From positions 64,740,701-64,804,698 of the forward strand of contig NC_068993.1 of NCBI RefSeq assembly GCF_001194135.2: a stretch of 63,998 nt of DNA, given 5' to 3'. Positions 13,164 to 59,896 of the stretch are shown here, piece by piece; positions within the stretch are counted from its first letter, which is position 1; each line of letters starts with the position of its first letter. A model generated the notes under the pieces. The model was not told the DNA's origin. It was given only the letters and a program-made list of their open reading frames with translations, and did no database searches. The stretch comes from Octopus bimaculoides. Taxonomy: Eukaryota. The translations under genes were made by a program, and so were the position numbers.

Positions 13164-13215
13164 ATGCACCCATACCTTACAGTGATACTGTACAGTCAAT
13201 TGTTATGCATTACAG
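13164..13215 (+). CDS. Exon 1 (coding part): start codon and signal peptide [17 protein letters not shown](G)
   Basis: First ATG after an in-frame upstream TGA, followed by a hydrophobic 17-codon stretch. Phase-1 donor ACAG|gtgaga joins exon 2 to give Gly-Val-Asn-Cys, a plausible signal cleavage site. Confidence 0.7.
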
Positions 13216-13558
13216 GTGAGATATTGTGCCTCATCAGGTGACTTTTCAAATAAGTACCTCGTTTTTTACTCGCCGTTTCGCTTATTTTTATAACAACACA
13301 TTTTTAGTTATTGTAACATTTCATGTGTCCATAATGAACACAGATAGAATGAAAAAATCAACCTCACATCAGTAAAAAAAAACATAACAATAAATAAAGT
13401 ATACCAAGATAAACGAATAACGAATATAAAATAGAATGTAATACGCCGATAATAAGACACGATTAAATAAATAAAACATAAAATATACGAGATCAGAATA
13501 AAACAAGAAAACCAATTGGACATTTATATAGTCCTTTACATTTTATCAAAACAAGTTA

Positions 13559-13639
<81 letters not shown>

Positions 13640-14969: not shown

Positions 14970-17900
14970 GATAACGTAGTTTATGCTACAAGTCTTCAAT
15001 GCGGGCAAAACGCTGCTCCTCTAAATGGAAACCTTGCATGCCATCGTGGCTTTGTGGCACGAAGCAAAGCAAGACTTGCCGTCCACTCAAGCGCCTTTCG
15101 GAGCACTTGTTGTTGTTCAGATGTTGCTTAAAGTGAGGTGCGGATGAACCGGCATATTTTCTTGTCTGTGTATTGGATGTGTTACAACTGCCGATGTTTC
15201 TTTCATTAACTCTGCGTCTGAGGTTGTTTTTGTCGTTGCTGAAGTCGCTGCCAATGCTGATATTCCTGGACGTGATCCTGGTCGCTCTGCTGCAGCTGGT
15301 ACAGCAGCTATTTCCGATCGCAAAGCTAGTGTTACTGCCAGTGGCAGTAACCCCCTCAGCCTCATACCTCAACCCCTTCGGCTTCGCATCACCACACCCA
15401 CACCACTGGGCAGTCATTCTCTGCCCTATATGAGCACCCAGCCTCTGATCGCAGTTTAGGGGTACTCACTAAAATTTTCTTAATGCTGGGCTTACTAAAC
15501 AAACGTTCGTATCTGTGTGACTGTGAACTATTTGTCCACCAATCTAAGGAATATTCTACCCAAACAGGTTTTAACATTGAGAGAGAAGGGTGGGGCAAAC
15601 TAAACGACACTATGGTGACGCTTCCTTTAGCGGGTACCAAGGCACGGGCACGGGCACGGCATACAGACGCCGTCCTTAAACTCACTGGACATANNNNNNN
15701 NNNNNNNNNNNNNNNNNNNNNNNNNNNNNNNNNNTATATATATATATATGGAAGATAATTACAGCGTCTGAAGAAAAACGAGGTTTCGTGCCAGATGCTT
15801 AGCAAACTGATAAGTGCCATGCAGGAATTTGTTACTTGTAACTTTCTGCTGATTAAAACCTGAAAAAGTAAATGAATTCATATATTGAGTTCCGTTTGCC
15901 ATGTTTGTTTTAACACACACATACGAGCGCGCGCGCACACACACACACACCACACGCACATAACATTGCACACACGCACACCTACATAATTCCATGCCAT
16001 TTTATCACTTTATTAATTTGTCATCTATTTCTCTTATATTTAACTTTAACAAAACAGTGTCCTCTCTTCTTCAGGTGTTAACTGCTCTGGTGTCACAAAG
16101 CTAACAGCCTACCCAAGTATCCAGTACTTGACCACTCCTAACTATCCTCACTTTTATGCAAGGTAAGGATGTAACAATGTTTTTTTCTCTTTGAAATTAA
16201 TCTTTACCTCTCAACCATAATGTGTTTTAGTGTTTCAGTTTGGAAGTAAAGGCTCTGATCTCACTGCAATAATACAATATACAGGTTACTGTTTGCTATA
16301 TTTACATCGGCAAGTAAAATGTCTTGCGGTAAAAACACGGACTACTATGTTATATAGAGACGTTCGTGATTGTTGTGGTGAAGGATATTCAGATATTCAG
16401 GACGTACTACAAGAAAACTATCCTCTGGACGAAAGAATTTTTTTTTTTTTTTTTTTTGAAATCATATATTTCCAATATGTAGAGATCTTGCTCCCAAACG
16501 ATGGGAATATTCTGTCGTTCTTGGCAAACTAACTTCTCCAAATTTAATAACTTCATTAAATAATGTTTTGCAATGCGGCAATCGCTACTATCCTTAGACT
16601 CCGTTCTTTTCTTTTTATTTATAAACATATTATTGAGGTGAGCAGGCTGTCGAAGACGTAGGCCTACCAGTACTACTTGTTCAGTGCGATAAAGTAGACG
16701 GTGGGGACCGATGTCAAGCGCAGGGTCGGAAAGATGATTGCAGCGTTTCAGGGAATGTACAAAACCTGATCCACGGTCACTCAGGATATCAGCATCGGAA
16801 TCTAGACTAAGTACTATGCAAGTCAAATGTGAGAAGAAACAAAAACTGCAAGAAGCAACATATTCGGATAAGACACTTAGAAATCCTTAGAATTTTGCAA
16901 CATCAATCGTTTCAACAACACAGTTTCAAGAAGTGCCTCGTCGCGAAGTTTCGAAGACATTGTGATGGAACAAAAGATGCATATTTACTTATTACAGCAA
17001 CCAGTCATCAGCGTGAAGAAACTGCTATGTGATTATCATCAACAGGAAAAAGAAGACAGAAAAATTGTTGTGCGACATTGTGTGAACATTGGAAGAGGAC
17101 CTGGGCTGCGTGGGTTCGTGTACTTTTGCATGGTTGTGTCTGTGCGTATGCGTCCGAATATCTACATCCATAGGAATGTGAATGTGGGTGCGAATTTCAT
17201 TATGGTAAAGTCTGGATTTCGAGGCCACGCGATGGCATTTTTTTATTTTGACAGACACGGATCAATTCAAAGACTGCGAGGGGAATTGCGAAACTGTTTC
17301 GAAACTCATCGAATGTATTTAACTCTAATTCAAAATTTCAGTTCTGCCCCACATTGTCACACTGATTCAGTCAGCGAATTACAAGTACGAACGTCTACGA
17401 ATTACTCAGCCGTCATATTTCAGTATGGAGGCAGAACAGTTAATTGAATAACTGGAATACATACCGTCGAAACTGGGGGCAATTTATTTCTTTTTCTTTT
17501 AGATGCGTGCATGCGCGCGCGCGCGTGTGTGTGTGTGTGTGTACGTGTATGTGAGTGCCTTTGAGCGTATGTCATCCTATTTCATTCCATACGTGGAATA
17601 TATTCTGTGCGAGTTTATGTCTATATATGTATATATGCTCGTGTATGCATGCATGCATGTATGTATGTTTGTATGTATGTATGTGTATTTGCGAAGGGAG
17701 CCCCATTGCTTGGCTAGCTGCTACGGTAGTTTATATCTTCCTCCTTGGCGGAAGGCAGAATAAATCACCAGTTTTAGGCCAATCAGCTACTGGCTTTAGC
17801 AGCATTACTCGGACCTAGGATACAGTTGCAGACATCGACACCGTTGCACTTAAACCATAGGAGGACAAGTGAAGAAAATTCCCTGCCGCTTTTCACCACG

Positions 17901-18608: not shown

Positions 18609-21600
18609 GACGCGCGCGCACACATATCTGTATGTATATATGTGTATGCATATATATATATATATAGATAGATAGATAGATAGATAGATAGACAGCTGAC
18701 TGGGAAGGGTTCGCACTGGAAGTAATAAGAGATGGCTGTTTGCGATGAAGGTCTCTTGAAACGGAATTTCCCGAAGAATAGACTCGAAGAGGAAGCCACT
18801 GTTAAAAGGACAGGCCTGCGGAGGGTTGATGTAACTGCTACAAAATATAAGCCAAATTTTAGATTACATAATATGGCTTTAATACAGGAAGATTACGTTG
18901 GATATTTGTCTTCTAGCTACACTATGTATCATTAAAAGTTAGGATTATCACGGCTGATACAAAGAATAATGTAATTTTCGATATTATATAGATATGATAC
19001 ATGATAAAAAAATTTTAAATTCTGGTCTGACACATTAGTCTGTGACGTTCATGACTACCCGTTTGATAAGGTTACACCAGACACGTGCATCACAACCATA
19101 TGCGCGTGATATGGAGATCTCATATCAAGATAAAAAGTGGATGACTTTGCAGGTGGGGCCTAGTTAGAATTTTCTTCAAGTCAAGTAGGTCATCTGCTCA
19201 AAAGGTCCCTGAATAAAGGTTATTTAAGGATGATGAACCAAACACCTATGTTTCTAGAAGTGAATTATTCAAATCCCAAACAATTCCTTTCAGTACATGG
19301 TACTGATAACCACCCCCTACTACTCTTCTGCTTAAGATAAGAGATGCACATATCGTCAGCCACCAAGGGACAGGCTCAACTGGCTACGGTCAAGTAACTA
19401 ACAAGCAAATCTGTGGCATTGAGCAGAATATTTGTTGTAGCCCATCTTTTACACCAAGACAAAACATATACATGTTAACACTTCCAATCAGTTTAAGATC
19501 AGAAGTCATAGGAGCCGCTGCCTGTTACTCTGTTACGGGATTTATTATTATTATTGTTGTTGTTGTTGTTGTTGTTACCGTCTTGAGACGCCACGTCTTT
19601 TCGATTAGCAAATCTGTATAAGGCATCTATTTTACATGGATGACTTAAAACTCTATGGCAAAGTCGATAATGAGCTTGAAGGACAGACTACGTGCGAAGA
19701 CCACTTTCCAGAGGCACGTTATTAATTTAAAGTTGGGTGCAACATTTCCCTTTTCAGGATCCTTGACACATAACAATGTCTTTCTCCTTGTCATCCAGCT
19801 GGGTACTGCGCCTTCCTGCAAGCTCTTATCTAGCTGTTGCAATATCCTTTCATAGAGCCCTCTCAGCTTCTTCATCCAATAACATTATTATTTATTTATT
19901 TATTTATTTGCAGCAACTTGTCATGTTCATGGTTAATCAACTCTGGAAGCCGGTCTGGAAAATTGTATCTTGATGTCAGAGATTCAGATATCGAATATTC
20001 CATCGGATGTATGAAGGACTATGCAGAATTGTACTTAGGTAAGACAACAGATATCTTCACATGACTGTTCTAGAACACGCTTACACCAAAACATGCTGGC
20101 ATGATATACACAACCGCACAACCGCATAGATAAATGGACAGACAGATAGATAGATAGATAGACAGATAGATAGACAGATAGATAGACAGATAGATAGACA
20201 GATAGATAGATAGATAGATAACCACTACACACATTTTTTTTCTCTCCTTTTTTTTTCTCTGCTTCTTTTTCTCCTTGTTTCTTTCTGTGTTCTTTTCTGT
20301 GGAAGAGCGTAGGCTCGAAACGTTAAAGACTTTTTCAATTCCCGAGCGTTATACTAATACATCCGTTTGTTTTCTACACCACCTGTCTTCATCTGTTTTT
20401 TTTGGGGGGGGGAGGGGGGTTGTGAATTCTCCCATGATAGATAGATAGATAGATAGCGTGTCAAGGCTGGTCGTTTTGAATACAGGTACAACTCATTTTA
20501 GCCAGCTCAGTGGACTGGAACGGCGTGAAATAAAAATGTTTTGCTGAAAGACACAACGCGTCACCGGCGTATGAACTCATGACTTTACGATCGCGAGTCG
20601 AATACTCTAACCACTAAGCCACGCGCCTTCATACACATCATATACAACATTAAAAGGAAATGAGGTAAAAAGGGGATGATAGTGATGAGGTCCCCTTGCT
20701 ACAAGAAGACCGCTAAGGATAATCGAGGAACTCCACCATCCAGGATCTCGCTGAACCCCAAGGGCAAGTGCTCTTTCCGATTTCTCTTCTCCAACTCACA
20801 AGTCTACAGGTAGAGCGATACCATCCACTCTTGCTATTTTCGCAAGTTTCCTCTACTTTTCATTCAATTCACTCGAGGACAATACTTCCCTGTCCAACCA
20901 CACTTTTCTGTTCAAAGAGGAATGTCACTGTCCACCTGCCTTTCAACCTCATCCACCAGGAAAAGGAAATCTACTTCACCTGTCCGATTAAAGAAAAGCG
21001 GTGGGGCAATCTTCCCTATGGACCCGGAACCTGATAGCCGGATCCACCTCACATGCTACAGCAGCCCTTTGGCATAACTTCTTAAGTCAAGAATGCCCGG
21101 ATACTGAATGAGTGCACGCATCTCGAACAAGCCCGTCTGACAGCACAAAAGGCACAGAGCCTGAAATTTTGTGGCTAGCGTTTAGTTGGTGAATTCGCCC
21201 CCAATATTTGAGTACCACTTCATTTTATTGGTCGCTGAGTGAATAAAGACGAATTTGAACTCAGCGGGATTTGAAGTTTTAATGTATAGAGGTGGAAAAC
21301 ATGTCACAATATGTTTTTGCTAACGCTCTGTCGTATCTAACATTCACAAGTATTGAATTTTTTTTTTTTTTTATCAACAAGTATCTGAGAGAATGGGGTC
21401 AATGTAAGGAGGAAAGACAAACAGTGATTGTCAGTAATTTGTAAAAGGGACGTCATCAACATTAACAAGTAATAGATTCACTAATTAGAGGGGGAAACAC
21501 CTATTATAAATGTAGGTAAAGCTGCAGCCTATCACAAAGTTCAAGATTTTTCAGATACATCACAAGGGAAATTGTCCTATGGCAGTGTATATCATTGTTT

Positions 21601-24600
21601 TCGAGTCGCATAATTTCGTTTGGTCTATATAACTTCGCCAGTCTCTCCGATCTCACCCATAAGTGAACTAATGTAGCAGCCTCTACATGTTTCCTCGATC
21701 TGCAGGAAATAGCTACAAAATGTCTATCTTCTAGATACTGTCTTATAAATGACACATTAGACAATGTGTACATAGGTCTTCTACTGTTAGGAAAAAGACG
21801 GGATTGTCACATCTGGAGTGTCTTTGTCCATACGTCTGCTCGATCAACGCTATTTTGAGCTTAACATTTCATGAAACACCTAAGGCATCTCTAACTTTGT
21901 CTTCTTCAAATTTACTTGAAGAAATTAATTCACCAGAGAAGAAGCTTCAAGTTTGCAAAACTATATTCATATGTACACAGCCCTCCGTATTTGAAGGGAA
22001 CAGTAGATCCCTTCAGATCTTGTAAATTTCTGATGCTCACCCGATTTCTGTAAAGTGAGCCGACGTCGACGCCTCTAAGTGTTGACTAAAAGGCAAAGTT
22101 GGCGGCGTCGGTTGAAGTTGCAATTCAAAACGTAGAGAGCAAAAAAAAAACAAAAAAACAACAAATCAAAGCATTTTGAGGATTCTACGAGTGCATCATC
22201 CGATATTATCATGCATTATCATCCTGTTATAAGTTTTATCTTTACCATTAACCTCAGCAGCAGCAGCAGTATCACCATCATCGACACCACGACCATCATG
22301 ATTATCATAACCATTACCTTCACCCTCTCTTTACTACCATCATCATCATCATTGTTATCATTATCATCATCAACATCATCATAATCGTCATCAAGATCGT
22401 CATCATCATCATCATAATCGTCATCAAGATCGTCATCATCATCATCGTAATCATCACCATCATCATCATTACAATAATGGTTTTTGATTTTGCTTTGTTT
22501 TGTTCGTTTATTTTATTTTTTTTAAATCTACGTCTAATAGCATTAGATTCTTTTTAATAATTCACAAACTAACAAATAATAAATCGTTAAATTATGATAT
22601 TTTATCTTCCAGAAAACATGTGAAATGTTTAGTTATCGAAATATTTTTCTAATCATAAATATAATGAGAATAATCAGTTCAAAAACAGTGGAATAACATC
22701 GCAGCCAAAATATTGAACAGACTGGAAAAGTTTGCAAATTCTTTAAAGTTTAATTATATTATATCATTAGAGAAATCTTCATTCACATCCAGAGGAGAAT
22801 AATTGAAGTAATTTATCGAATACAATTTATTATAAATTTATGTATGGCTGCACAAACGCCCATAAGCATACGTATAAAGATAAACTCATATATGTAGCAT
22901 ATTATAGCAATTGCAATAATATATGTATGTATGTAGGTATGTATGTATGTATGTATATTGACACATACAAACACACACACATATATGTATGTATACACTT
23001 ACATAATACATACACAGGCATCTACTAACATCGTGCACGCATGTACACACCGACGCTTTCCAGTACCTAATGTCTATAATTGATATTTTTCATCATTTTC
23101 TATAATGCACTGAGAGCAATCCGGTTTGTACAGCGAACTCACAGATTGTGACTCCTCTGTCTACGCGAATCAATTCGTCCACTTTGCTGGCGTCTCTTGT
23201 CAGTGACGGCATTTCGTTAGTCTCCCACTGTGATTTGTCTTCAATACAGCTTTCCTCTGCATCTATCCATCTGTGCTGACATCTCGCTCAATATTCTGTT
23301 ACCTTCTGTGGATGCTGCACTCTTTCTTCGCCGAAAACTGACTGTCCGCCTCTGGCTTCTGTTTGCACTCCACTATTTGTCAGCAATAAAGAAGATCGAA
23401 AAGACAGGTTCCTATAGAGGTGGAGTTACTTTACCAACATGTGCTGAAAACTTTGGTAACAATCTTCCACCCGGGTTCCGAAACCGCAACTCCAAATCAC
23501 CATACAAACATCAACTGGTGACGTCACCCACCTCCAGTCCAATGAAATTCTACAAACACCAGTTGCTGACGTCACCTAACTAAAGACCAATCAAACCCGA
23601 ACTTCAGCGAATACAACGAAATGACCCTTTAAGAAAACCAACTAACCGGAACGACTTATGTCCGTATCCACAAGGAAACCAACCAAGCAGAACAATAAAC
23701 TTGACCACGGAAAAAAGAAAAAACCTCACCAGGATTTTAACGAATCAAAAATCAGACCCGCTCGCGGAAAAAAATTATAAATTCATCCGATCCCAAAACA
23801 TGCCACGACAAGTGAAAGCGTCTACAGAAGGAGGATCAGAGAAACTGTAAACCTAATTCCTCCCCCCCACCTTTTTTTTTGACTATTTTCATTTCACACT
23901 TGTTCTTTTTTTTTTCCAGTATGACTTGTCGACCACCACTAAAATTAATGAACTTTGTACATTCAAACAAATTGATATACAGTTTTAATTATATTGACTG
24001 CTGTGAACATTCAAACATACACCTGTTTTGAACATGTTAATTTATCAACATTGAAACATTTTAGTTTGTCAACATTGAAACTTTTAAAGATTTTTTTTTT
24101 AATTTTAAACTTTTACCATTGATAAACAAAAACTATTGTTGAATCTAGTTTGGTATATATGTAAATAAATGTATTTTAAACATTTACGAGTTTTTGAAAT
24201 TTAGGTGCATTTTCAACAGCACATTTTCCTATATTTTTTTCCTGCGTGGAAACACCCCCACCCCCCTCTTTTGTTAAATATATATATATATACACATATA
24301 CACTCATCACTTGCCTCGCAGTGGCACACTGGGGCACACCTACAATTTCTACGACATCGTAGTGGCCATTTTTGTTTGGGTTTCTCGCTCGTAATGCACA
24401 CATGTGCAACTGTGTGTGCTTAGCTATAGCTGTTTACTTACTTATAGTTATTTTGCAGGAACCGACAGAAAAGCTGATATCTTCAGCCGATGGTGTGGAG
24501 GCACTCGACGCAAGTTTTACACCTATCACGCAAGTCTATTCATTCACTTCCATTCAGATGCTTCTCTGACTGGCCGAGGCTTCCAGTTATCGTATTACAT

Positions 24601-25917
24601 GGGATCACGTAAGTTACTCATTTAACACATTATTTTTCAATGATATAATTGTCATATAACTGTTAGTAAATAAATGCGAATAAAAAAAACAAAGAAATTG
24701 CTAAACTATTTTTAATTATTGCCAAATAATGGCAATAAGTGTTGCATACTTTGGTATTACAAGAACTTAGAGCGAAATAACAGCATTACCGAGCGAAATA
24801 ATAGCATTACAGAGATTAAACCGGAACTCAAAGAAAGAACTTCCAAACTTAGTTCTTTTTTTTTATTTATCTATTTCGTTTATAGATTCTAATTTAGGTT
24901 GAAATACAAACTCTCCGTTTGTACAATTTAAATTAAGTATTTAAAAGTCAAGTTTAAACATTGCAGGAGTTTCTCAAATCGATGTTCTGTCGTATCTACT
25001 ATTCTCTATGTTGATAAGAATTGGTATTCTGAGAATATGTAACATATTTTCTCCGAACTGATGGACATATCCATTGCTTTCCCTTGTAGCCTTTAAGAAC
25101 CAACTTCAAACTGCATTGTGTTTATTTTTCATTACTGATATTACTGGATTTATCTCCCTTACTCGCACATTTTGATTTTAAACATTCCTAGAGGGAGTAT
25201 TAACCTCCTAATTACAGTGATAATCTATCAATTTTTCGATAATCTCAGTTTATCAAAATATTTCAATTTCACTGTAATGCATACGTGAGAGTCTTTATTG
25301 CGTGCCATACGAGTCTTCATTATGCCATACGACTTTTTGAAGTACTTCTCTTTGACCCGGGAAAATGTGTATATGTGTGTGTAGATGTGGGTGTGCATGT
25401 TTGTGTGTGTATGTGTGCTCTATTGATAGCTTTATGGACGGAGTTTATAAAAGCTGGCATGATCGTAGGCTTAGTTTGAGCCTTACGTATTACAGAGTGG
25501 TCGACTTTAAAACCACCAACTGGCAAAGGGTTTACTTGTCACAACTATTCAGATTTTATCAAGGCCGCTGATTTCTACTGCAGATATCTAGAATTTGCCA
25601 TTTTCAGCATCTCTTCCTTGGGGATAAAAACAAAACGTTTTATATGCTTCCGTTCGCCCTCCTATTATTTCATGAAAATCTTTGAGAAGTTGCAAGATAC
25701 AACACTACACTGAAAAGTGGGTGTACACTGTCGAATAAATCCTTATCGATTTATTGTTTCTATCATATAAAATGAGTATTTCAACTTTAAAAAAAAAACA
25801 ACGATTGGAGATACATTTCTAATCAATATGCCAGTTCTAACTGGCCCTAAGTGGTTCCGAACACTGCAACAAGCGATAAGAAATATAGGCTTAGAAGTAA
25901 ATATGTAAATAATTCGC

Positions 25918-47240: not shown

Positions 47241-48320
47241 TTAAGCATGAATACATGCAATGAAATTAATGTATATGCAACTGTGCAGTTAGCATCATTG
47301 CTAATGGACACCGAAAAGGAAACAAAATTCATCTTTTTCTATACATATCCAGTGTGTTCCAGCATAACCTTAAATAGCCTTAAATGTGCTGAATAAAAGA
47401 AAGCGATGAACACGTACGTGCACACACATCCCAAAACATAGACACACATTTAAATGTCCCTCCCACAAACATACGAACATGCGTACAAACATGCACACAA
47501 ACGAGAGATCCTTTATTGATATCCAGCCCTGTTAGAAATAAGTATCAAATTTTCAACAGCTCAAACCGTAGCATACTCTACGTGGGCAGTAAGGGCATCA
47601 GATGATAAGATCCTAGATATTCCTAAAAGGGTGGGAGCATCATGATTAGTAGACCTTGGATTAAAGTCTCTTTAACAGCATTTATCTAACGTGAGACAGT
47701 TGCGAAATACCATTATACTGCCCTCAAGTAGTATAATGATATTTTGAGAATCCTCGACTGTGATCGTATGTCCGACATAGAGAGGGCAGTGTAATAAGCA
47801 GTTTTATTCTCAGCCACATGGTTCTGGGTTCATTCCCAACGAGTAGCATCTTGGACAAGTTTCATCTATCATAGCCTAGGGGCGGCCAAAGCTTGTGAGT
47901 GGATTTGGTAGACAGAAACTGTTTGTCGCTCACCACCGCTTGACAACCGGTGTTGGTGTGTTTACAACCCCATAACTTAGCGGTTTCGCAAAAAAACTGA
48001 TAGAGTAAGTATCAGGCTTAAAAAAAATAAGCACTGGAGTTGATTCCTTCGACTAATAATCTTTACGGTGGAAACAAGTAAAAAATAAAAGATTTCCCCA
48101 TTTCATCTGATGCATTGAATCCCTGTCATTTTTTTTTACAGAAATCTTAGTTGTTGGTGGATTTTGACAGCCGCAAATGAATTCGACATAGTGGAGCTAC
48201 AAGTGCTGGATTTTGAGGTAGAAGACTCACCTGGGTGCGTGTACGATTCTGTTAAAGTTTATGATGGTAAGTGTAGATATTTAACTTAAAAAGGATACGA
48301 TAAATAGAAACATAAGTATA

Positions 48321-48387
<67 letters not shown>

Positions 48388-51300
48388 CCCATGTTACAAA
48401 AGGTTTGCCATCCAAGATTAGAACTGTTGTGGAGCTCCCTGTAATATAAAACGGATTCCCATATCATCCATGTTCATTGACGCACGAGCTCATGCACACA
48501 CACACACACACACACATACACACACACGCATACTCATGCAGACACACTCATCTCCTCCTTTCCTGTATGTATACGGGTGCAGGCTTGACTGAGTTTGAAG
48601 AAGGTCGCTTTATAGCCATGTTGTTTAGTGTTCAGTCCCTTTGCACGGTATGTTGTGCAAATGGCTTCTACTATAGCACCGAGCCGTCCAATGTCTTATG
48701 AGTTGATTTGGCATGCGGGAACAGTGGAAGCCCGTCGTATATATATATATAATCTTTTATTTGTTTCAATCGTTTGACTGCGGGCGTGCTGGAGAACCGC
48801 CTTGAGGTTTTAGTTGAACAAATCTAGCCCGGAGTTCAGGGAGTCTCTCTAGGCCATGCTGCTATTTCTTCGCAGCCAGAGATCACTTCGGGCATGTGAT
48901 TATAGTAGCGCGGGAAATAATCGCAAGCCAGATTCTTCAAGTCGAGCCAACCAACATAAAACCTAGTGGCAAACCAAGAATGAAATGATTGGATAATATC
49001 CATAATTTTTGTTGGTCAGCTTTGGGAATCCAGCAGGAAGTTTTAATTATGATTATTTCCTATAGAGGAGGTGCCTCAGTACTCTATCCCTACGATCCAC
49101 CCAGGAATCGTGGAGAGTGGGATTAAATTGACTGTAATTACAACATTAATGGGGAAAGCAGTGATGAATGTTAAAGAAAACTTATTCGCGCAAAAGATGT
49201 AGTGAACTTAGCTTCGAACTTCTAAAATAAGTGTGAAGTCAGTCTGAAGGTGGAGAGAGAGGCTGGTTCTTGGTGCTGAGGTGTGTGTGCGTGCGGGCGC
49301 GTTTATTTATATTGAATGTAATTATATCAACCAATGTAAACTTTCAAGTTTTTTTCTCACGTGACTTTTTTTGTCTCACTCAACAGGTGGAAATGTGAAC
49401 TCGCCAAGTCTCGACAGATGGTGTGGTGTGAAGCATCCTTCATTTATTAGTACCGGTCAAAAACTCATGGTTCAATTCGAGACAGATGATTCTTATGATT
49501 ACAAAGGATTTAAAATGCGCTACATAGCGAGAGATGTGTGTAAGTAGAACACTTGCATATTTGTGTGTGTGTGTGTGTGTGTGCGCGCCTCGATGTGTGT
49601 ACCACCGTGTGTGCACGTGTGTGTGCGTGTGTGTGTGAGTATTCCAGATACTCAGTATTTTCCAATTAACTGAAAATTTCTCTCTTGCGTTCCATATTGA
49701 CGCCGGTTACCAAGAAGCAATATTGTATAGTGGAGAATACTTTGTTGGAAACATTATTATTATTATCATTATTATTACTACTACTACTACTACTACAACT
49801 AGTAGTAGTAGTATATTTTGCTATTGTTTTGTGAAAAAAATTGTTAATGTTGGTCATAGCGTTGACGGTGACGACTGTGGATTTGCTACGTAATCTCGTT
49901 GATATCTTTGTTAATGACGATAAGTAATTTTACGTGGTTGCTTAATACCCACATCACCCTGATCGTGCAGATCTATACCAAAAGCCCGCCAATCATTACT
50001 GTATCGACCAATGCGTCCTTTTATTTGGATTCTGCTTTAATTGTTAAGATGTTGTGGTGTGCTGTTTCGAATCATGTGTTATTACACACGGTCTATAATA
50101 TTCTTCTCCTGCATCAGCAGCGACAAAAATTGGTTTAGCTTTACTCAACAGCGCTTTCTCTTCTGATATGGGAAGAAATCCTCGTAGGTATTCGAAACAT
50201 AATATGGAGACGATTGTGTTTGGTATTACCTTGTCCTGAATCAACATTAAAAATTTATTAATATAACCGATTTGCTTTTTGATTCTTCTGCCCAAGGAAA
50301 TGTTATTTATTTATAAATATCTATTTAATGGGCGTCGACAGTCGAGTGACCTGTCAAGTGGCTCATGCCATAGTAACAAATATTGTTTCTCGAAACGATC
50401 ACGTGGTTATACGCAATTGACAATAAATGCACTCCATAAAAAAAATATACCAATAAACGATAGCTTAAAATTGAGATATTAATTTATGGCAACATGAATA
50501 ATAAATATTTTTTTAAATGTTATTTTCTCTGCTTTCGTTTTTTTTTCTTGCCGTTTATATTGAAATTTATTCCAATATTTAATGTTTTCGTTGTATTTTG
50601 TTTCATAATATTAAATTATTGTCTTTATATAAACATATTTGTTTATCAATTTTTTTAACGTTTCATTTACTTGTACGTTGATTTGTTTAGAAAAGAATAT
50701 TTTTTAAAAAGCTGTTCATGAAAATATTTTTAACATTGCACTTTTTATGATATGTCTTATTTGAACCAGCGTCCTTAAACGTCTCTTATATTTACTTTTC
50801 ACAAAATCAAGACCATTAATTCAGAAACTATAACATATCAAGTTTAAATCAAATAAAGTTCATCAAATAATGCTGTATGGTGATATTTGTTTGCTTGTCA
50901 TGGTTAGTTATTGGGTTTATTCTAATGAGAAACAAAGATGTAATAACAAGTTCAACAGTTATGTTATTTCCCCATGTTTCAATGAGGCTTTTTGTGGTAG
51001 TCTTCATTCACTATTTTCTTTCCAACAATAATTTTTCAATAGATACTTCTTATTTCCATTCCTTTTATTGTGTTTTGAATCATACTAATTCTGGATTTGG
51101 AAATAGATGGGGGACTCCATATACAGTAACTTAACAATAAAGCTACCTCTCATAAGAATGAGCTGTGGTCCTGTTCAAAATTGCTCTATTCAGCGATTGA
51201 TTGGAGATTTTGTTGATGAATGTGTCAATGATTCTGATTACTGCAGGAGTGGTTGGAGTTCCTATGGATATAAACAGACTTTTCGTCAAGTTTTCTGTAA

Positions 51301-54180
51301 GAATATATGTCTGTCTTGAGGTTTGGAGTTACATTCAAGAAATTGACCTTCATTACACTAATCATAACTGTTCTAATCAGTAAAAATTCTTTGAAGATGT
51401 TTGTTATCATTGAAGGTGTGATCGTTGGTATTGCTTGATATTGCTAAACCAGCGTTCCTGAACAGAACTACACGGTTGTTGGGGTTATGTTTATTAAGGT
51501 TAAAAAGGTTGGGTCGGTGACTTTAAATTCTCATTACACCGCTGATTTGTATCAACTTTTCTTCATAGGTCGCGGTCTCTTTGTTTTGAATCAGAAATAC
51601 TCAAACTGGAATATACACATATATTCTTTTTACAGCATTCCTCTGCGGCCCTGGAAAATACTTGAAAGCGGAACTAGAAGAAAGAAAATACCTAGTTTCA
51701 CCAAATTTAATATCTCCCCTTTACAGGTAAAGTATGCATCACTTATATTTTGTGTTTCTTCATACATTACATTTAAGTTTTTGTTTCTGTTTCTTTTATC
51801 ACAATTTTCTGGATTTGTTCCTGCGAAATCTGTTAGTGTTTTTACCCTTGAAATGTTTGAGTGTATATTCTTCTATACCAATGACCCTCAACTCCTTCTG
51901 ACAAATATTCCGCCATGTTTCTTCTTTCACTTTTGATGCATTCCCGTACGCTAATCAGCCCACGTCTGCCTTTATACCTCTTCATGTACAGCCTGTGTAC
52001 GTTCGCCTTAGGGCGGAGAGCACCATGTATTGTATTTGTCTTTCGGGCAGTGCGATCGAGTTAGTTAATCTCCGTTCGTGTCCATTTCAGAGTGGTGGGG
52101 TACTATAACGGACTACAGTAACAGCCCATATGTTGATGGCAGTTACAAGGTTCCTTGAGCTGAGCTTAGATTTCAAGAGAAGTTTGAGGGCTTCAAACAT
52201 GCAGTGATGACCTTGTCTTTCATTTCTCCGTGCAAGATATTGTCCAACTCCAGAATCCCACGGTACTTGTACCCATCATCATCCGGGTCTTCCACTCACT
52301 CCCATTTGGCAATTCTATGCGCCTACAATCTGCTCTTTTCCCCCGTTTCAAAGTGAGCACCGCACACTTCGAGATACCGAATTCCATCCCTATATCCTTG
52401 TTGTACATCTGCACAGTCTCAGCCAGCCTCTCTATTTCAGCTTCTAATTTTTGCGAACAGTTTTAAATCATCCATGAAGAGAAGGTGATTGAGATGAGGT
52501 CCATTCTTTTTCAGCTCATAGTGCACAGTGACTTTGGGTGGAACTATAGAAAGTGGGATCAAGGCTATAACAAATAACAAAGGTGAACCAGAGTCTTCCT
52601 GGCAGATACCTCTTTTAAATGTTACCTCGGCCAAGTGCTGGTTGTTACAGAAAAGACGTGTTTTCCAACTAGTCATGCACACACATTCTCAGAAACATGC
52701 CAAGTGTTTCCAAAATCCACGAATGCAGCAACATATCCTAAGTCCTTGTAAACTCTATCCAGACCATGGATTTTTTTGGTACCGTTTGCAGTTCTTCATT
52801 ACAACCTTGTCTATCACAAGGTGGTCCTTGATGCCCTTCGATCCTTTTCGGCATCCCTTTTGTTCTATTGGAAGTAGATTCTCTCCGCAAGGAACGTATA
52901 TATTTTCCCTGCATAGATGTCTGTTAACACTTTCCATAAGAGGTTAAGAAAGCAATGGGTCGGTAATTACCAACCTCATTGCCCTCTGACCGCCGAATAT
53001 TTGCAACCTTCACGAGATTCTGACCATTTAGCTTTGACTTCATTAACTTATCCACCCTTCTGATGTACTCCTTCTCAGTTCTCATTTTCATTTCTATAGT
53101 TAGTACTCTGTCGGATTCTAACACCCCTAAGATACTTATAACTCTCTCCTTCTTTCAGTGATTTTAATATCTGGTAATCGGATGCCTTCACAGATGACTA
53201 CTTGTCCCTTATTCATGACTAATAGTGCACACTTAATTATGCTAAATTCCATGCCTATATCTTTTCTGGGGAGTTTTGCAGTTTGTATTAAGGAATCTAT
53301 TTCGTTTTTTGTTCTCATGGAAAAGGTTCAGATCATCCATTGAGAACAAATGGTTAATTTTACCTTTACAATCTCTGAACAGATACCCTGCCGTTGCATT
53401 CCTTAATACTAAACTAAGGTGGATTAAGCATAAGACAAATATTAAAGGGGATAACGAGTTTCCTCGGAAAATTCTTCTCTTGATATTAACATTCCTTAAG
53501 GATGTGTCACCTGTGTAGAAATATAGTTTCCATTTCTTCATAGTACAGTTAATTCTCGTGTCGTCTGCAATATTGAATATACTCAGTCACTTATCAATGA
53601 GTGTGGAATCATGTCAGAGGTTCCAGGTGCTACAGACACCTGATGACTTATCAAAAAACCTGAATCACTTCAGGTTTGAATATTATGATCAAATAGGAGT
53701 GGTTGCAGAAGGAAGAAAGCCAAAGTGTTACATATGTGCAAAAATATATCACTCGGAGGCTTTCTGCTTCGTGGGAGAGACAAGAGCACAGGCCAAAAGG
53801 CAACTGGCGTTCTCGCCAGCCATTACTAGGAAGATTTTCCTCTCCATCTGTTACAATGTGTGTTTCTAAATAGAATACGTCCGTAAGAGATGTTATTTCT
53901 GGACGGATACCGCAGTAAATTTGCTTTCCAACGATGCATTTGCATTAAGTATGATGTATAGAAGGATGTGTGTGTGTGTGTGAGTGTATCCTTTTCATGT
54001 TTCTACGCATAGACACACTAATGTCTTTCTCAAAATACTCTAGTAAGCAAGATTTTGAAAGAACCATAGTATCAAATTTGTTAATAGAAATTAATGGGAT
54101 GTTAACAACTGTCACTGACAAATATATCTCGTAATGTATATATTTATATACATACATACATATGTTTTTGTGTGGATGTT

Positions 54181-57026: not shown

Positions 57027-57314
57027 TAATTATATATATATGTGTGTGTGTGTGTGTATATGCATACATATATATACATACATATAAATATATACAATAT
57101 ATATATACATATATACATACATATATATACATATATATATATATACATACATATATATATATATACATAGATATATATATACATACATATATATATACAT
57201 ACATACATATATATACATACATACATATATNNNNNNNNNNATATATATACATAGATATATATATACATACATATATATATACATACATACATATATATAC
57301 ATACATACATATAT

Positions 57315-58458: not shown

Positions 58459-58527
<69 letters not shown>

Positions 58528-58569
58528 TATATGTATATGTACATATGTATGTGTATATATATATGTGTG

Positions 58570-58605
<36 letters not shown>

Positions 58606-59635
58606 GGCGTATGTATGTATATGTGTGTGTAAAATTTATATACGAGTGTATGTATACATGTACATATTTAAGAGTATGTGTCTATGTGTTATATGCAAAT
58701 AAATATAGATATATACATATAAGCAAACATGCAAATACATTACAAAAATGTCCGTAAATTAGAATAAAAAGCTTGCTCTAAAGAGAACTTGAGCAATGAT
58801 ACTTTATATTGTCGTATATTGCAGATTATAACATACAAAGGGTCAGAAGATTACTGGCGAGTTCACGTTATACACACACACATACACATACACACTTACA
58901 AACATACAAAAATTAAGGAAATCTAGAACTCCGGGGAATAGCTATGAAAACAGCTTAGAAATTTGAGTAAAGGTACCCTCATAAGACAGAAATGGTGACC
59001 AGCAAGCTGCTACAGATAATGGAACTCTATACATCGTTCAATTCTCTGTAGCGGATTGCTCGTCATTTTTTCCCCGTCTTATAAGAGTATTTTTTTTTAT
59101 TTTTACCTGACCTTCTAAGCTATTTTCGAGATTTCCTTAATTCTAATATATACATATTATGAAGTTAAAAGTTATGGCCGGTAATAGAGCGACCATTAGT
59201 TTCACACCTGTAAAGTGCTTAGCAATATAGGCGAGTCGTCAGACTTAAATGCACATAACCTCTTGAACAACAGGAAGAAATACATAACGGTCAGTAGGTT
59301 TTGTAAACGAAAAATAATTGTCCGTGCTGCGGCCCGGATGTGGTCATCCCAATTACATCGGCTCCGACTATGATATTCGAAGGAGCTGTTGGGGAACTAC
59401 TCAGCGAATGGGGTGTTCCGAGTCTGAAGTCGGAAACGTTTTAGAAGAGGGCATTGAGTGAATACCCATTTCCTGGAGGTTAAAAAGGTATCCGGATCGT
59501 GTGTGCATATATATATGCCTATGTGTGTCTGTTATAAACTGAAAACTCAGCTGTTAGTCAGGGTTTCCCATTCAATCATCAAACAGTATTAAAGTGCCGA
59601 ACATAAGTTGACGGTTTTTATACAAAAATGTGTGC

Positions 59636-59690
<55 letters not shown>

Positions 59691-59896
59691 AGACTGAGAC
59701 TGAGACTAAGCAGAATATAAAATAAATATATTAAAACAATATACATCTTTTTATTTCATTTGTCCTTTTAGTACTGTGAAATGTGAATGGCAAATAACGA
59801 CCAAAAAAGCAGATGAACTCGTAAAGCTTGAAGTAGCTTTCTCCTCATTAGATAACTCAACAAACTGTGACGACAACTATATAGCTGTGTACGACG
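13164..59896 (+). CDS. Multi-exon gene (3'-incomplete): signal peptide plus at least 3 tandem CUB domains; secreted or membrane protein of cubilin/tolloid-CUB-like architecture
   Basis: Manual splicing of exons 1-7 (787 nt) gives [262 protein letters not shown]. It has four canonical Cys per CUB and the PxYP, CxW, YDG, WCG and F-x-SD/TD..GF..Y motifs. All introns are GT-AG and phases match. Orthology cannot be assigned without a search. Confidence 0.9.
13647..14068. repeat. Identical 200-bp direct duplication (13647-13846 and 13869-14068) flanking a 10-N gap; likely unmerged contig overlap
   Basis: Base-for-base identical copies, each preceded by (GA)n and separated by N10. Confidence 0.9.
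13980..14180 (-). mobile_element. Dong/R4-clade non-LTR element, restriction-like endonuclease region fragment
   Basis: [52 protein letters not shown] matches the WD..IQTD....NRPDI....C..ID pattern. Confidence 0.8.
16075..16162 (+). CDS. Exon 2: CUB1 N-terminal part ([28 protein letters not shown])
   Basis: Acceptor cctctcttcttcag|GT, donor AG|gtaagg; 88 nt, phase 1 to 2; TPNYP motif. Confidence 0.9.
19610..19880. mobile_element. Two Dong/R4 RT fragments in opposite orientation
   Basis: Plus strand about 19610-19690: [13 protein letters not shown]. Minus strand about 19705-19875: [33 protein letters not shown]. Confidence 0.8.
19914..20038 (+). CDS. Exon 3: CUB1 middle ([41 protein letters not shown])
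   Basis: Acceptor tttatttgcag|C, donor AG|gtaaga; 125 nt, phase 2 to 1; CxW and C..DY motifs. Confidence 0.9.
20285..20335 (+). ncRNA. Hammerhead-ribozyme-like motif of the minimal, Penelope pseudo-LTR type, with a variant core
   Basis: tcttt-t-CTGTGGA-A-GAGC[gtag]GCTC-GAAA-CG-TT-aaaga: stem II 4 bp, palindromic AACGTT stem III, stem I tcttt/aaaga. The core differs from CUGANGA at position 6. Confidence 0.35.
20457..20632 (-). mobile_element. tRNA-derived SINE 5' part
   Basis: Reverse complement reads GGCGCGTGGCTTAGTGGTTAGAGT (A box)...GAGTTCATACGCC (B-box-like)...GTTGTGTCTTTCAGCAAAACATTT. Confidence 0.7.
20690..21030 (-). mobile_element. Tx1/L1-clade LINE 3' end relic
   Basis: Frameshifted SWWMRLKG...[38 protein letters not shown], resembling Tx1-like ORF2 C-termini as I recall them. 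Confidence 0.55.
21500..21900 (-). mobile_element. Highly decayed RTE-like LINE 3' RT region
   Basis: [27 protein letters not shown] weakly resembles the LLYGSETW....RLE.ND motif. Confidence 0.3.
22250..22475. repeat. Imperfect (CAT)n tract with an internal 33-bp tandem duplication (22381-22446)
   Basis: ATAATCGTCATCAAGATCGTCATCATCATCATC occurs twice. Confidence 0.85.
23090..23400 (-). mobile_element. mariner transposase N-terminal (HTH) relic
   Basis: Reverse strand [13 protein letters not shown]...[29 protein letters not shown] resembles W...F..G..S.ED..RSGRP...KVDELIR.DRR.T..EIA. Confidence 0.6.
23440..24223. mobile_element. Candidate solo-LTR-like or TIR element with a duplicated CRE+CCAAT module
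   Basis: Termini TGTGCTG...CAGCACA form an inverted repeat with TG..CA ends; TGACGTCA at 23519 and 23567; CCAAT at 23539 and 23587; AATAAA at 23694. No target-site duplication found. Confidence 0.3.
24459..24608 (+). CDS. Exon 4: CUB1 C-terminal part ([14 protein letters not shown]...[20 protein letters not shown])
   Basis: Acceptor ttattttgcag|GA, donor C|gtaagt; 150 nt, phase 1 to 1. Confidence 0.92.
30480..31990 (-). mobile_element. CR1-group LINE: apurinic endonuclease plus linker, 3'-truncated
   Basis: [64 protein letters not shown], then [16 protein letters not shown] and IGPL. Confidence 0.92.
32005..32900 (+). mobile_element. Dong/R4-clade non-LTR RT fragment
   Basis: [67 protein letters not shown]; frameshifted. 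Confidence 0.9.
33489..33582 (+). CDS. Exon 5: CUB2 N-terminal part ([30 protein letters not shown])
   Basis: Long poly-T tract then tctttcag|CC, donor GG|gtatgt; 94 nt, phase 1 to 2; SPFYP motif. Confidence 0.9.
33930..34370 (-). mobile_element. Two copies of the abundant tRNA-SINE (GGCGAGCTGGCAGAATCGTTAG family), minus strand
   Basis: 33930-34112 and 34200-34370 are reverse complements of the 38816 copy; the second has an internal deletion. Confidence 0.85.
36900..37720 (+). mobile_element. CR1-group LINE 3' RT fragment
   Basis: [68 protein letters not shown]; frameshifted. Confidence 0.88.
38640..39450 (+). mobile_element. Cluster of four same-orientation tRNA-SINE copies
   Basis: Copies at about 38640-38815 (5' truncated), 38816-39028 (full; A box TGGCAGAATCGTTAG, B box GTTCAAATTCC, (ATT)n tail), 39070-39140 and 39215-39440. 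Confidence 0.88.
40375..41290 (-). mobile_element. Decayed RTE-clade LINE: endonuclease and linker
   Basis: [25 protein letters not shown] resembles FYDQL..TI..+P.....+LLGDFNARVG; downstream [14 protein letters not shown]. Confidence 0.65.
43051..43185 (+). repeat. 15-bp minisatellite (ACTACACACACACAT)x9
   Basis: Strict period of 15; one unit (43126-43140) carries a C to T variant. Confidence 0.95.
44443..44540. mobile_element. Isolated mariner terminal fragment, same family as the element at 44981
   Basis: TATGAGGATCGGCTGAAAATTTCATAGGCTGACCAAGA...GGTTTATTTTTCAACAT closely matches 44981-45062. Confidence 0.8.
44981..46505 (-). mobile_element. Near full-length decayed mariner transposon with both TIRs and a nested insertion at about 45500-45845
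   Basis: N-term [41 protein letters not shown] (46320-45850); C-term [36 protein letters not shown] (45483-45055); TIR-like ends TACAGGGGTCGACTGAAAAGCTCATAG and GATGAACTTTTCAGTTCACCCTTA. Confidence 0.88.
46733..46890 (+). mobile_element. Tx1/L1-clade LINE internal fragment (post-RT region)
   Basis: GC-rich island reading [44 protein letters not shown], resembling LF..TF....MDNFQ.SLAWQ as I recall it. Confidence 0.55.
46890..46972 (-). mobile_element. tRNA-SINE head (GGCGTAGG..GTGGTAAG family)
   Basis: Reverse complement GGCGTAGGCGTGACTATGTGGTAAGAAGCTTGCT..GGGTTCG..TTGGGCATGTGCCTTCTACTAT; shares body with the 47780 and 48620 copies. Confidence 0.7.
47780..48090 (+). mobile_element. tRNA-SINE (GAGTGGATTTGGTAGAC family) ending about 50 bp before exon 6
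   Basis: GGTTCTGGGTTCATTCCC B-box region, GTGAGTGGATTTGGTAGACAGAAACTG, CGCTTGACAACCGGTGTTGGTGTGTTTA; homologous to 55605-55885. Confidence 0.85.
48142..48266 (+). CDS. Exon 6: CUB2 middle ([41 protein letters not shown])
   Basis: Acceptor tttttttttacag|A, donor G|gtaagt; 125 nt, phase 2 to 1. Not in the ORF track. Confidence 0.93.
48620..48835. mobile_element. Degenerate pieces of the same SINE family (5' half on +, 3' tail on -)
   Basis: CTTCTACTATAGC..GAGTTGATTTGG..GAAGCCCGTCGTATATAT followed by an inverted tail segment. Confidence 0.65.
48845..49130 (+). mobile_element. RTE-clade LINE 3' end relic
   Basis: HFGHVII...[29 protein letters not shown] resembles FGHV.R....ILQ.....R..GRP...W.DNI. 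Confidence 0.6.
49387..49539 (+). CDS. Exon 7: CUB2 C-terminal part ([50 protein letters not shown])
   Basis: Acceptor ttttttgtctcactcaacag|GT, donor T|gtaagt; 153 nt, phase 1 to 1. Confidence 0.93.
49950..51900 (-). mobile_element. Decayed Penelope-like element (RT to GIY-YIG)
   Basis: [10 protein letters not shown] (degenerate LYRDDGLAI), [42 protein letters not shown]; many stops. Confidence 0.72.
51900..52990 (-). mobile_element. Dong/R4 RT fragment (copy B)
   Basis: [84 protein letters not shown]. Confidence 0.92.
52990..53900 (-). mobile_element. Dong/R4 RT fragment (copy A), abutting copy B
   Basis: [62 protein letters not shown]. Confidence 0.9.
55605..55885 (+). mobile_element. 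tRNA-SINE 3' portion, starting at a 100-N gap
   Basis: AGTGGATTTGGTAGACGGAAACTGAAAGATGCCCGTCG...GGGGTCGATTTGTTCGACTAAAAGGCGATGCTCCAGCATGGCCACAGTC. Confidence 0.88.
56230..56950 (+). mobile_element. mariner transposase catalytic half plus 3' TIR, decayed
   Basis: [60 protein letters not shown] spacing is 29, i.e. a 5-codon deletion from D34D. TIR ..AACTTATGGGATGACCTGATA followed by TA. Confidence 0.93.
57915..58085 (-). mobile_element. tRNA-SINE copy (GGCAGAATC family), degenerate
   Basis: Reverse complement of the 38816-type body: GGATGAAAGGCAAAG..CCGCTAAGCATTT. Confidence 0.75.
59772..59896 (+). CDS. CUB3 middle exon ([41 protein letters not shown])
   Basis: Acceptor catttgtccttttag|T, donor G|gtaagt; 125 nt, phase 2 to 1, same size as exons 3 and 6; CxW and YDG motifs. 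Confidence 0.9.

What the first reader, a model, noticed from the sequence alone, without database searches (positions are those of the whole stretch)
13164..59896. Hidden 47-kb gene for a secreted or surface tandem-CUB protein
Seen: eight small exons (52-153 nt) buried in repeats. Exons 1-7 splice into a stop-free signal peptide + CUB + CUB, and a third CUB follows. Established: CUB domains mediate extracellular recognition (complement C1r/s, tolloid/BMP1, cubilin, spermadhesins, neuropilin). Inference: no protease, EGF or SRCR exon lies between the signal peptide and CUB1-2, so this looks like a CUB-only lectin/receptor-like protein. It may belong to a lineage-expanded cephalopod family with unknown ligands.
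Basis: partly seen in the sequence, partly recalled or inferred. Interest (0 to 1): 0.7.

Follow-up and report, generated by a model that had tools for sequence, protein, structure and literature searches.

The report
Middle of an annotated octopus multi-CUB gene
The small exons are real, but they are the middle third of an already annotated, roughly 250-kb Octopus bimaculoides gene for a membrane-anchored protein with eight CUB domains, not a hidden 47-kb gene for a small secreted protein.

Summary
These are 16075-16162, 19914-20038, 24459-24608, 33489-33582, 48142-48266, 49387-49539 and 59772-59896.

Joined, exons 2-9 give 316 stop-free residues, and Pfam CUB scores E = 9e-48. This peptide is an exact substring (aa 275-590) of RefSeq XP_052828520.1, 'cubilin' of Octopus bimaculoides. 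That gene spans about 250 kb. The full-length O. sinensis orthologue (1086 aa) has a signal peptide, eight CUB domains, one transmembrane helix and a 47-residue tail.

The window therefore holds only CUB3, CUB4 and two thirds of CUB5. No 8-mer from the rest of the protein occurs in any reading frame of the window.

All assembly gaps are intronic, and no coding exon is missing between 16075 and 59896. Cuttlefish mRNA contigs carry the orthologue: 80% amino-acid identity, no indels, and saturated synonymous sites. The gene is therefore expressed in cuttlefish and under strong constraint.

CUB1-4 keep the Ca2+-site signature and CUB5-8 do not. The architecture is not cubilin's.

Verdict: the gene is real and already annotated, but its function is uncharacterised. 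Interest is low.

The parts
13164..13215 (+). Probably not an exon: it lies inside an intron of the annotated gene.
   Evidence: It has an ATG, a phase-1 end and a CAG|gtgaga donor. It is the only candidate of its quality on either strand of the window. However, it is absent from all orthologues' N-termini, has no match in the cuttlefish mRNA, and has a weak hydrophobic core (1.92 against 2.5-3.3 for the real signal peptides).
16075..16162 (+).
   Evidence: ttcttcag|GTGTTAAC ... GCAAG|gtaagg. Part of the exact match to XP_052828520.1 aa 275-590. The blastn HSP to Sepia mRNA ends at the exon edges.
19914..20038 (+). Exon, middle third of CUB3; phase 2->1; 125 nt
   Evidence: 93% aa identity to Sepia.
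24459..24608 (+). Exon, last third of CUB3, including Ca2+-site positions D98 and S100; phase 1->1; 150 nt
   Evidence: 49/49 aa identical to Sepia at only 79% nt identity.
33489..33582 (+).
48142..48266 (+). Exon, middle third of CUB4; phase 2->1; 125 nt
49387..49539 (+). Exon, last third of CUB4; phase 1->1; 153 nt
   Evidence: In Sepia, a genomic read-through ORF (P0089) and the mRNA (P0008) agree only over the equivalent 51 residues. The exon boundaries are therefore conserved.
51636..51726 (+).
   Evidence: tblastn with the Sepia protein. ttacag|CATTCC ... TTACAG|gtaaag. Part of the exact match to XP_052828520.1.
59772..59896 (+). Exon, middle third of CUB5; phase 2->1; 125 nt. The last third of CUB5 and everything after it lie outside the window.
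   Evidence: (CUB 20.3 bits alone).

Best explanation
The window is Octopus bimaculoides DNA. It holds eight consecutive internal coding exons (aa 275-590) of a roughly 250-kb gene that RefSeq calls 'cubilin' (XP_052828520.1; full-length orthologue O. sinensis XP_029644438.1, 1086 aa).

The protein is a type I membrane glycoprotein: signal peptide, eight tandem CUB domains, one transmembrane helix and a 47-residue cytoplasmic tail. The window encodes CUB3, CUB4 and the first two thirds of CUB5. The signal peptide, CUB1-2, the rest of CUB5, CUB6-8, the TM helix and the tail lie outside it.

Mechanism (inferred, not shown). The four membrane-distal domains, CUB1-4, keep the Tyr-Glu-Asp-Asp (-Ser) signature of Ca2+-binding CUB domains. 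In solved complexes such domains hold a ligand through the Ca2+-organised loops. CUB5-8 have lost the signature and would serve as a stalk. The protein would therefore act as a cell-surface, Ca2+-dependent receptor or co-receptor. CUB3-CUB4, the part in this window, would be its most constrained binding module.
For: Identity (shown).
- The 316-aa splice product is an exact substring of P0212 = XP_052828520.1.
- It matches O. vulgaris at 315/316, O. sinensis at 314/316 and the Argonauta orthologue at 289/316.
- The gene range is 249.6 kb in GCA_001194135.2.
- No 8-mer of aa 1-274 or 591-906 occurs in any frame of the window, against 260 8-mers of aa 275-590.

Architecture (shown for orthologues).
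- Pfam finds only CUB: 8 stretches, E = 2e-145 in Sepia.
- A local profile finds eight domains in O. sinensis, and a TM segment at aa 1021 with KD 3.24.

Expression and constraint (shown for cuttlefish).
- The intronless 1084-aa ORF sits on 4-5.3 kb Logan contigs; one sequence is indexed in 89 blocks of the collection.
- One of the runs is Sepia esculenta larval RNA-seq.
- Octopus versus Sepia shows 80% aa identity with no gaps, pN 0.13 against pS 0.83 (saturated).

Mechanism (inference).
- Positions equivalent to C1s Y17/E45/D53/D98/S100 read YEDDS in both complete CUBs of the window. They read YED(D/N)x in CUB1-4 and are lost in CUB5-8. The pattern holds in both paralogues and in both octopus and cuttlefish.
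- Ca2+-binding CUB domains commonly bind ligands through this site (PMC8051872).
- The closest solved structure is cubilin CUB5-8, E = 1e-41.
Against: - No RNA data from O. bimaculoides itself were available here. The junctions rest on the RefSeq model and on cross-species mRNA.
- The O. bimaculoides RefSeq model (906 aa) ends without the TM helix. The TM and tail are inferred from O. sinensis and from the separate old fragment XP_014782933.1.
- The Ca2+ signature is a sequence motif only. The mapping uses a human C1s CUB1 sequence written from my memory. It reproduces the published numbering, but it is not a database record.
- No ligand, tissue or phenotype is known.
- Exon 1 is the single best ATG/hydrophobic/donor candidate in 128 kb of both strands. 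An alternative first exon is therefore not excluded.
Confidence: 0.9

Rival explanations
1. One reading: a self-contained gene, or an alternative-promoter isoform, that starts at 13164 with its own signal peptide and encodes a secreted protein starting at CUB3.
For: Exon 1 has an ATG, ends in phase 1 as the next exon requires, and has an 8/9 donor match. It is the only such hydrophobic candidate on either strand of the window. CUB modules here are phase 1-1, so skipping CUB1-2 would keep the frame.
Against: Every annotated orthologue and both O. sinensis isoforms start with MYTTQFKM... or MYIFISNQMYTT... followed by CUB1-2. The segment matches nothing in the cuttlefish mRNA. Its hydrophobic core is interrupted by Y-S-Q and is weaker than that of real signal peptides. 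Invented hydrophobic first exons are a known artefact at this very locus: S. pharaonis CAE1288457.1 starts with MLLFSRILLVGVEGLHVL, which full-length transcripts contradict.
Confidence: 0.07
2. The protein is an auxiliary or clustering subunit of ligand-gated ion channels, in the manner of the CUB-plus-TM proteins SOL-1, LEV-10 and Neto, rather than a general endocytic or adhesion receptor.
For: It has the same broad layout: N-terminal tandem CUBs, a single TM helix and a short tail. NETO2 is among the PDB matches, E = 2e-16. SOL-1, LEV-10 and Neto families regulate AMPA, ACh and kainate receptors, and molluscs have members of these families (PMC9282427).
Against: It has eight CUBs and no LDLa module. 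Per my own knowledge, SOL-1 has four CUBs and LEV-10 and Neto carry LDLa. Molluscs already have separate SOL-1, LEV-10 and Neto orthologues. Cubilin CUBs are much the closer sequence match. No expression or interaction data exist.
Confidence: 0.12
3. It is a true cubilin orthologue, as the RefSeq name says: a peripheral endocytic receptor working with amnionless.
For: The database name is 'cubilin'. The best PDB match is cubilin CUB5-8. Cubilin-length proteins of 3400-3800 aa top the library search.
Against: Per my own knowledge, cubilin has EGF repeats, 27 CUBs and no TM helix. This protein has no EGF, 8 CUBs and a TM helix. Identity to the cubilin-length proteins is only 25-27%. The ranking reflects summed scores over many CUBs.
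Confidence: 0.03
4. It is a decaying partial copy (pseudogene fragment) of a CUB gene.
For: Only internal exons are visible in the window, and they are surrounded by transposon debris.
Against: There is no stop or frameshift, all 16 splice sites are canonical, and the product is identical to the RefSeq protein. pN 0.13 against saturated pS versus Sepia.
Confidence: 0.01

Closest known systems
Octopus bimaculoides XP_052828520.1 'cubilin' (906 aa), and the older split models XP_014768246.1 'DMBT1-like' and XP_014782933.1 'nas-39'
   Same: It is the same gene: the window product equals aa 275-590 exactly.
   Different: Nothing differs in the sequence. The RefSeq model lacks the TM end. The 2015 model ends in a false exon at window 53384-53515.
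Octopus sinensis XP_029644438.1 / XP_036364424.1 'cubilin isoform X2/X1' (1086/1094 aa); O. vulgaris CAI9732331.1; Argonauta hians GAB1601767.1
   Same: These are orthologues: 314/316, 315/316 and 289/316 identity over the window's part. O. sinensis shows the full layout of signal peptide, 8 CUB domains, TM helix and tail.
   Different: They come from other species, and none has been characterised functionally.
Cuttlefish orthologue: Sepia pharaonis CAE1288457.1 'CUBN' (C-terminal half only) and 1084-aa Sepia transcripts (P0008, P0152, P0154)
   Same: Collinear and gapless, with 80% aa identity over the window's part and 75% over the full length. mRNA evidence exists.
   Different: Synonymous sites are saturated. 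The S. pharaonis genome annotation splits the gene and invents an N-terminus.
Paralogue B: O. sinensis XP_029639291.1 'BMP1-like' (1066 aa), Argonauta GAB1600020.1, Sepia pharaonis CAE1246542.1 'CUBN' (1054 aa)
   Same: Eight CUB domains in O. sinensis and Sepia, with the same split of Ca2+-signature domains: CUB1-4 keep it and CUB5-8 have lost it.
   Different: Only 41-49% identity, and the genes sit on other chromosomes or contigs.
Haliotis 'cubilin-like' XP_048245301.1 (1038 aa)
   Same: Eight Pfam CUB stretches and a C-terminal hydrophobic helix.
   Different: About 28% identity, and a different distribution of Ca2+-signature domains. Orthology was not tested.
Vertebrate cubilin (PDB 3kq4, CUB5-8 with intrinsic factor-B12)
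   Same: Tandem Ca2+-type CUB domains. It is the best solved-structure match, E = 1e-41.
   Different: Per my own knowledge, cubilin has 8 EGF repeats, 27 CUBs and no TM helix. Here there is no EGF, 8 CUBs and a TM helix.
SOL-1 / LEV-10 / Neto (CUB-TM auxiliary subunits of ionotropic receptors)
   Same: They are type I proteins with N-terminal CUBs and a single TM helix, and they offer a possible functional analogy.
   Different: They have a different domain number, and LEV-10 and Neto carry LDLa.

Membership tests
CUB domain (Pfam PF00431) | Profile score above the gathering threshold (21.4 bits) | tested here: met
   146-162 bits, E = 5e-43 to 9e-48, with two full domains. The CUB5 middle exon alone scores 20.3 bits.
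CUB domain (Pfam PF00431) | Four conserved cysteines per domain (two disulfides) | tested here: met
   Cysteines at model positions 3, 33, 61, 83 and 125, 156, 184, 206, and at 248, 279, 307 for the truncated third domain.
CUB domain (Pfam PF00431) | Beta-sandwich (jelly-roll) fold | not tested
Ca2+-binding CUB subtype | Tyr17 / Glu45 / Asp53 / Asp98 / Ser100 signature (C1s numbering) | tested here: met
   YEDDS in both complete CUBs of the window. The third (CUB5) reads L-D-N, so the signature is not met there. The C1s reference sequence was supplied from memory.
Ca2+-binding CUB subtype | Actual Ca2+ coordination and Ca2+-dependent ligand binding | not testable with these tools
   This needs protein biochemistry or a structure.
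Coleoid 8-CUB transmembrane protein, paralogue A (RefSeq 'cubilin' of Octopus) | Collinear, near-identical sequence to the annotated protein | tested here: met
   Exact 316-aa substring of XP_052828520.1.
Coleoid 8-CUB transmembrane protein, paralogue A (RefSeq 'cubilin' of Octopus) | Signal peptide, eight CUBs, TM helix and cytoplasmic tail | tested here: inconclusive
   These are present in the O. sinensis and Sepia orthologues. They lie outside this window.
Cubilin proper | N-terminal EGF repeats followed by about 27 CUB domains, and no TM helix | tested here: not met
   Pfam finds only CUB, in 8 stretches. The local profile finds 8 domains and a strong TM segment.
BMP1/tolloid and nas-39 (names given to fragments or to the paralogue) | Astacin metalloprotease domain | tested here: not met
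   No astacin hit in the window model, P0008, P0031 or P0037.
DMBT1 (name of the 2015 model) | SRCR and ZP domains | tested here: not met
   No SRCR or ZP hit. No Cys-rich module exon among the window's + strand ORF pieces.
SOL-1 / LEV-10 / Neto | CUB + (LDLa) + TM layout and association with ionotropic receptors | not tested
   The layout is only loosely similar and there is no LDLa hit. No SOL-1 or LEV-10 sequence or interaction data were at hand.

The most novel reading that the evidence does not exclude
The 8-CUB-plus-TM proteins form a distinct, uncharacterised molluscan receptor family. It has two paralogues in coleoid cephalopods and look-alikes in abalone, variously mislabelled cubilin, BMP1, tolloid, DMBT1 or nas-39. 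Its ultra-conserved CUB3-CUB4 module binds a specific ligand or partners an ion channel, for instance in the nervous or sensory system.
Probability: 0.15. Interest if true: 0.5.

Novelty: already known. Interest (0 to 1): 0.15.

Why it matters
It matters little as a discovery, because the gene is already in RefSeq for this species and its relatives. Three points have practical value.

- The database names (cubilin, DMBT1-like, nas-39, BMP1-like, tolloid-like) are architecture-blind and misleading for this family.
- Several annotations split or truncate the gene. These are O. bimaculoides 2015 and the current 906-aa model, and S. pharaonis. Full-length cuttlefish transcripts and the O. sinensis model show the true layout of 8 CUB domains plus a TM helix.
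- The window holds the most constrained part of the protein (CUB3 is 94% identical between octopus and cuttlefish). That is where to start if anyone looks for a ligand.

Tried and rejected
- The single-sequence word-index search with the 262-aa model found nothing, although an identical annotated protein is in the collection. That negative result was a false negative.
I used the 50-aa translation of exon 49389-49538 instead, which found the cuttlefish orthologue.
- I at first took Argonauta GAB1600020.1 (49% identity) for the orthologue and concluded that the window came from a decapodiform. The profile search showed that protein is paralogue B and that the window is Octopus (then 58-64).
- Regex and phase-aware enumeration failed to find the first exon of CUB5. 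It was found only by tblastn with the Sepia protein.
I replaced it with a screen for Cys-rich ORF pieces plus Pfam on the few non-repeat ones, all negative. That screen is less complete than a full six-frame Pfam scan.
- DNA for the O. bimaculoides and S. pharaonis loci was not returned because the gene ranges exceed 100 kb. XP_029644438.1 (P0162) was not on record as a gene product in the contig look-up.
- Literature searches for a characterised cephalopod CUB or cubilin protein found nothing relevant.
- No structure prediction was attempted.

Full report
**What the window is.** The window is AT-rich eukaryotic DNA with 13 N runs and many TA/CA microsatellites. Motif screening of all stop-to-stop pieces found CUB-like pieces only on the + strand.

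**Checking the observation.**
- 13164-13215 (52 nt)
- 16075-16162 (88 nt)
- 19914-20038 (125 nt)
- 24459-24608 (150 nt)
- 33489-33582 (94 nt)
- 48142-48266 (125 nt)
- 49387-49539 (153 nt)
- 59772-59896 (125 nt)

All internal boundaries are AG/GT. Exons 1-7 join into 787 stop-free nt, giving 262 aa. Pfam CUB scores 146 bits, E = 5e-43, with two domains. The eighth exon alone scores 20.3 bits on CUB profile positions 25-63.

Each CUB is built from three exons with phases 1->2, 2->1 and 1->1, so whole domains are phase 1-1 modules. A profile made from the two complete domains finds exactly these seven CUB exons and nothing else on either strand. The closest solved structures are cubilin CUB5-8 (3kq4, E = 1e-41), then neuropilin a1a2 and PCPE-1.

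**Finding relatives.** An exhaustive HMMER search with the 50 residues of exon 49389-49538 gave 541 hits. Among them was P0008, a 1084-aa protein carrying a near-identical stretch.

Its cluster holds Sepia pharaonis CAE1288457.1 'CUBN' and several 1084-aa ORFs on 4-5.3 kb Logan contigs. These contigs are intronless, so they are mRNA. One of the runs (SRR25097170) is Sepia esculenta larval RNA-seq.

It is 91 nt, phase 1->2, with ttacag| and |gtaaag boundaries, and it encodes the first third of the 'third CUB'.

Exons 2-9 then give 316 aa. They align to Sepia aa 274-589 without a single indel at 80% identity. blastn HSPs end at the exon edges. pN is 0.13 against pS 0.83, which is saturated. Exon 24459-24608 is 49/49 aa identical at 79% nt identity.

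**Identity of the gene.** A profile of Sepia, Argonauta and window sequences (A1) retrieved O. sinensis XP_029644438.1 'cubilin isoform X2', 1086 aa. Its 90% cluster contains the following:
- O. bimaculoides XP_052828520.1 'cubilin' (906 aa)
- O. vulgaris CAI9732331.1
- Argonauta GAB1601767.1
- the 2015 O. bimaculoides fragments XP_014768246.1 ('DMBT1-like', 593 aa) and XP_014782933.1 ('nas-39', 166 aa)

My 316-aa model is an exact substring of XP_052828520.1, at aa 275-590. The window is therefore O. bimaculoides, and the exon model, including the newly found exon, equals the RefSeq model.

That gene spans 249.6 kb in GCA_001194135.2. No 8-mer of aa 1-274 or 591-906 occurs in any of the six frames of the window, whereas 260 8-mers of aa 275-590 do. 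The signal peptide, CUB1-2 and everything after the middle of CUB5 therefore lie outside the window. In principle they could instead lie in N runs, but the gene's range of about 250 kb makes that unnecessary.

**The assembly gaps.** None of the gaps lies in an exon. The exact match to the same-species protein and the gapless match to cuttlefish mRNA show that nothing coding is missing. They also show that order, strand and phase are preserved across every gap-bearing intron between 16075 and 59896.

Two 10-N gaps (13847-13856 and 57231-57240) are flanked by perfect duplications of 212 and 74 nt. This points to unmerged contig overlaps. Most other gaps sit in microsatellites.

It is the single best candidate in the window by the criteria of ATG, phase 1, hydrophobicity and donor match, on both strands. 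Four observations count against it.
- All orthologues, including both O. sinensis isoforms and both O. bimaculoides models, begin with a different signal peptide followed by CUB1 and CUB2 before '...EQK|GVNCSG'.
- The segment matches nothing in cuttlefish mRNA.
- Its hydrophobic core (1.92) is weaker than the real signal peptides (2.5-3.3). It is weaker even than the invented N-terminus of the S. pharaonis gene model (2.38).
- It lies in an intron of the RefSeq model.

I give it about 7% as an alternative first exon.

**Other modules.** Cys-rich + strand ORF pieces are almost all microsatellite translations. The few that are not have no Pfam hit. Full-length orthologues show only CUB in Pfam. 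'CUB-only ectodomain' is therefore right. 'Secreted' is not: O. sinensis and Sepia have a strong TM segment (KD 3.24 and 3.05) and a tail of about 45 residues.

**Mechanism (inference).** I aligned every CUB of the octopus and cuttlefish proteins to human C1s CUB1, whose sequence I supplied from memory. The numbering Y17/E45/D53/D98/S100 is reproduced.

The result is YEDDS in CUB3 and CUB4, the two complete domains in the window. CUB1 and CUB2 read YED(D/N)x. CUB5-8 have lost the signature. The pattern is the same in paralogue A and paralogue B and in both lineages.

Ca2+-binding CUB domains usually hold ligands through this site (PMC8051872). I therefore propose a membrane-distal, Ca2+-dependent binding module on a four-CUB stalk. 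CUB3 is the most conserved domain: 94% identity to Sepia and 65% to the Argonauta paralogue.

**Family.** There are two paralogues, A ('cubilin') and B ('BMP1-like' or 'tolloid-like 2'; 41-49% identity). Both are present in octopods and in Sepia, so the duplication predates their split. Abalone has 8-CUB proteins with a C-terminal helix at about 28% identity. This is a small conserved family, not a large lineage expansion, and the window holds no tandem copy.

It is not cubilin (no EGF, 8 rather than 27 CUBs, TM present). It is not BMP1, tolloid or nas-39 (no astacin). It is not DMBT1 (no SRCR or ZP). A functional analogy with the CUB-TM auxiliary subunits SOL-1, LEV-10 and Neto (PMC9282427) is possible but untested.

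**Verdict.** The CUB exons are real and correctly delimited. The finding is an internal fragment of an already annotated but functionally uncharacterised gene. The signal-peptide exon and the 47-kb 'hidden gene' reading are not supported. Novelty: already known. Interest: low.

Noticed in passing
window 13635-13846 and 13857-14068; 57231-57240 flanks: Perfect 212-nt and 74-nt direct duplications flank two 10-N gaps. They look like contig overlaps that the scaffolder did not merge, so these two 'gaps' probably hide no sequence.
   Followed up: yes
window 53384-53515 (+): The 2015 O. bimaculoides model XP_014768246.1 ('DMBT1-like', 593 aa) ends in 44 residues ([13 protein letters not shown]...DVSPV) encoded here. 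This stretch is antisense to a reverse-transcriptase fragment at 53245-53541 (-). It is a false terminal exon, absent from the current model and from all orthologues.
   Followed up: yes
window 45058-45483 (-), 30750-31535 (-), 7120-7629 (-), 53245-53541 (-), 63630-63998 (+): Transposon debris lies in the introns and flanks. There is a mariner-type transposase (PF01359, E = 3e-18), a LINE endonuclease (PF14529, E = 3e-8) and three weak reverse-transcriptase fragments below Pfam's threshold.
   Followed up: partly
window 10007-10531 (-): A 175-aa ORF with no Pfam hit. By eye it has a GIY-YIG-like 'YDNIGETSRSINDRFKEH' stretch, as in Penelope-like elements. This was not verified.
   Followed up: no
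window 24459-24608: This exon is 49/49 aa identical between octopus and cuttlefish, although nucleotide identity is only 79% and synonymous sites are saturated. The constraint on the last third of CUB3 is unusually strong.
   Followed up: partly
Sepia pharaonis GCA_903632075.3 (proteins P0151, P0169, P0216): The cuttlefish genome annotation splits the orthologue into several 'genes'. It gives the C-terminal piece (CAE1288457.1) an invented hydrophobic N-terminus, MLLFSRILLVGVEGLHVL. Full-length 1084-aa transcripts contradict this.
   Followed up: partly
O. bimaculoides XP_052828520.1 (P0212) C-terminus: The current same-species RefSeq model stops at 906 aa with '...SVPKLVLVLVQFEKVYWNFSR'. It lacks CUB8, the TM helix and the tail. 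Those are present in O. sinensis and are carried by the separate old fragment XP_014782933.1, so the model is probably truncated.
   Followed up: no
tool behaviour: The single-sequence word-index search returned no hit for a query that is about 94% identical (245 of 262 residues, exons 2-7) to a protein in the same collection. The profile query found it. Negative results from that mode should not be read as absence.
   Followed up: yes
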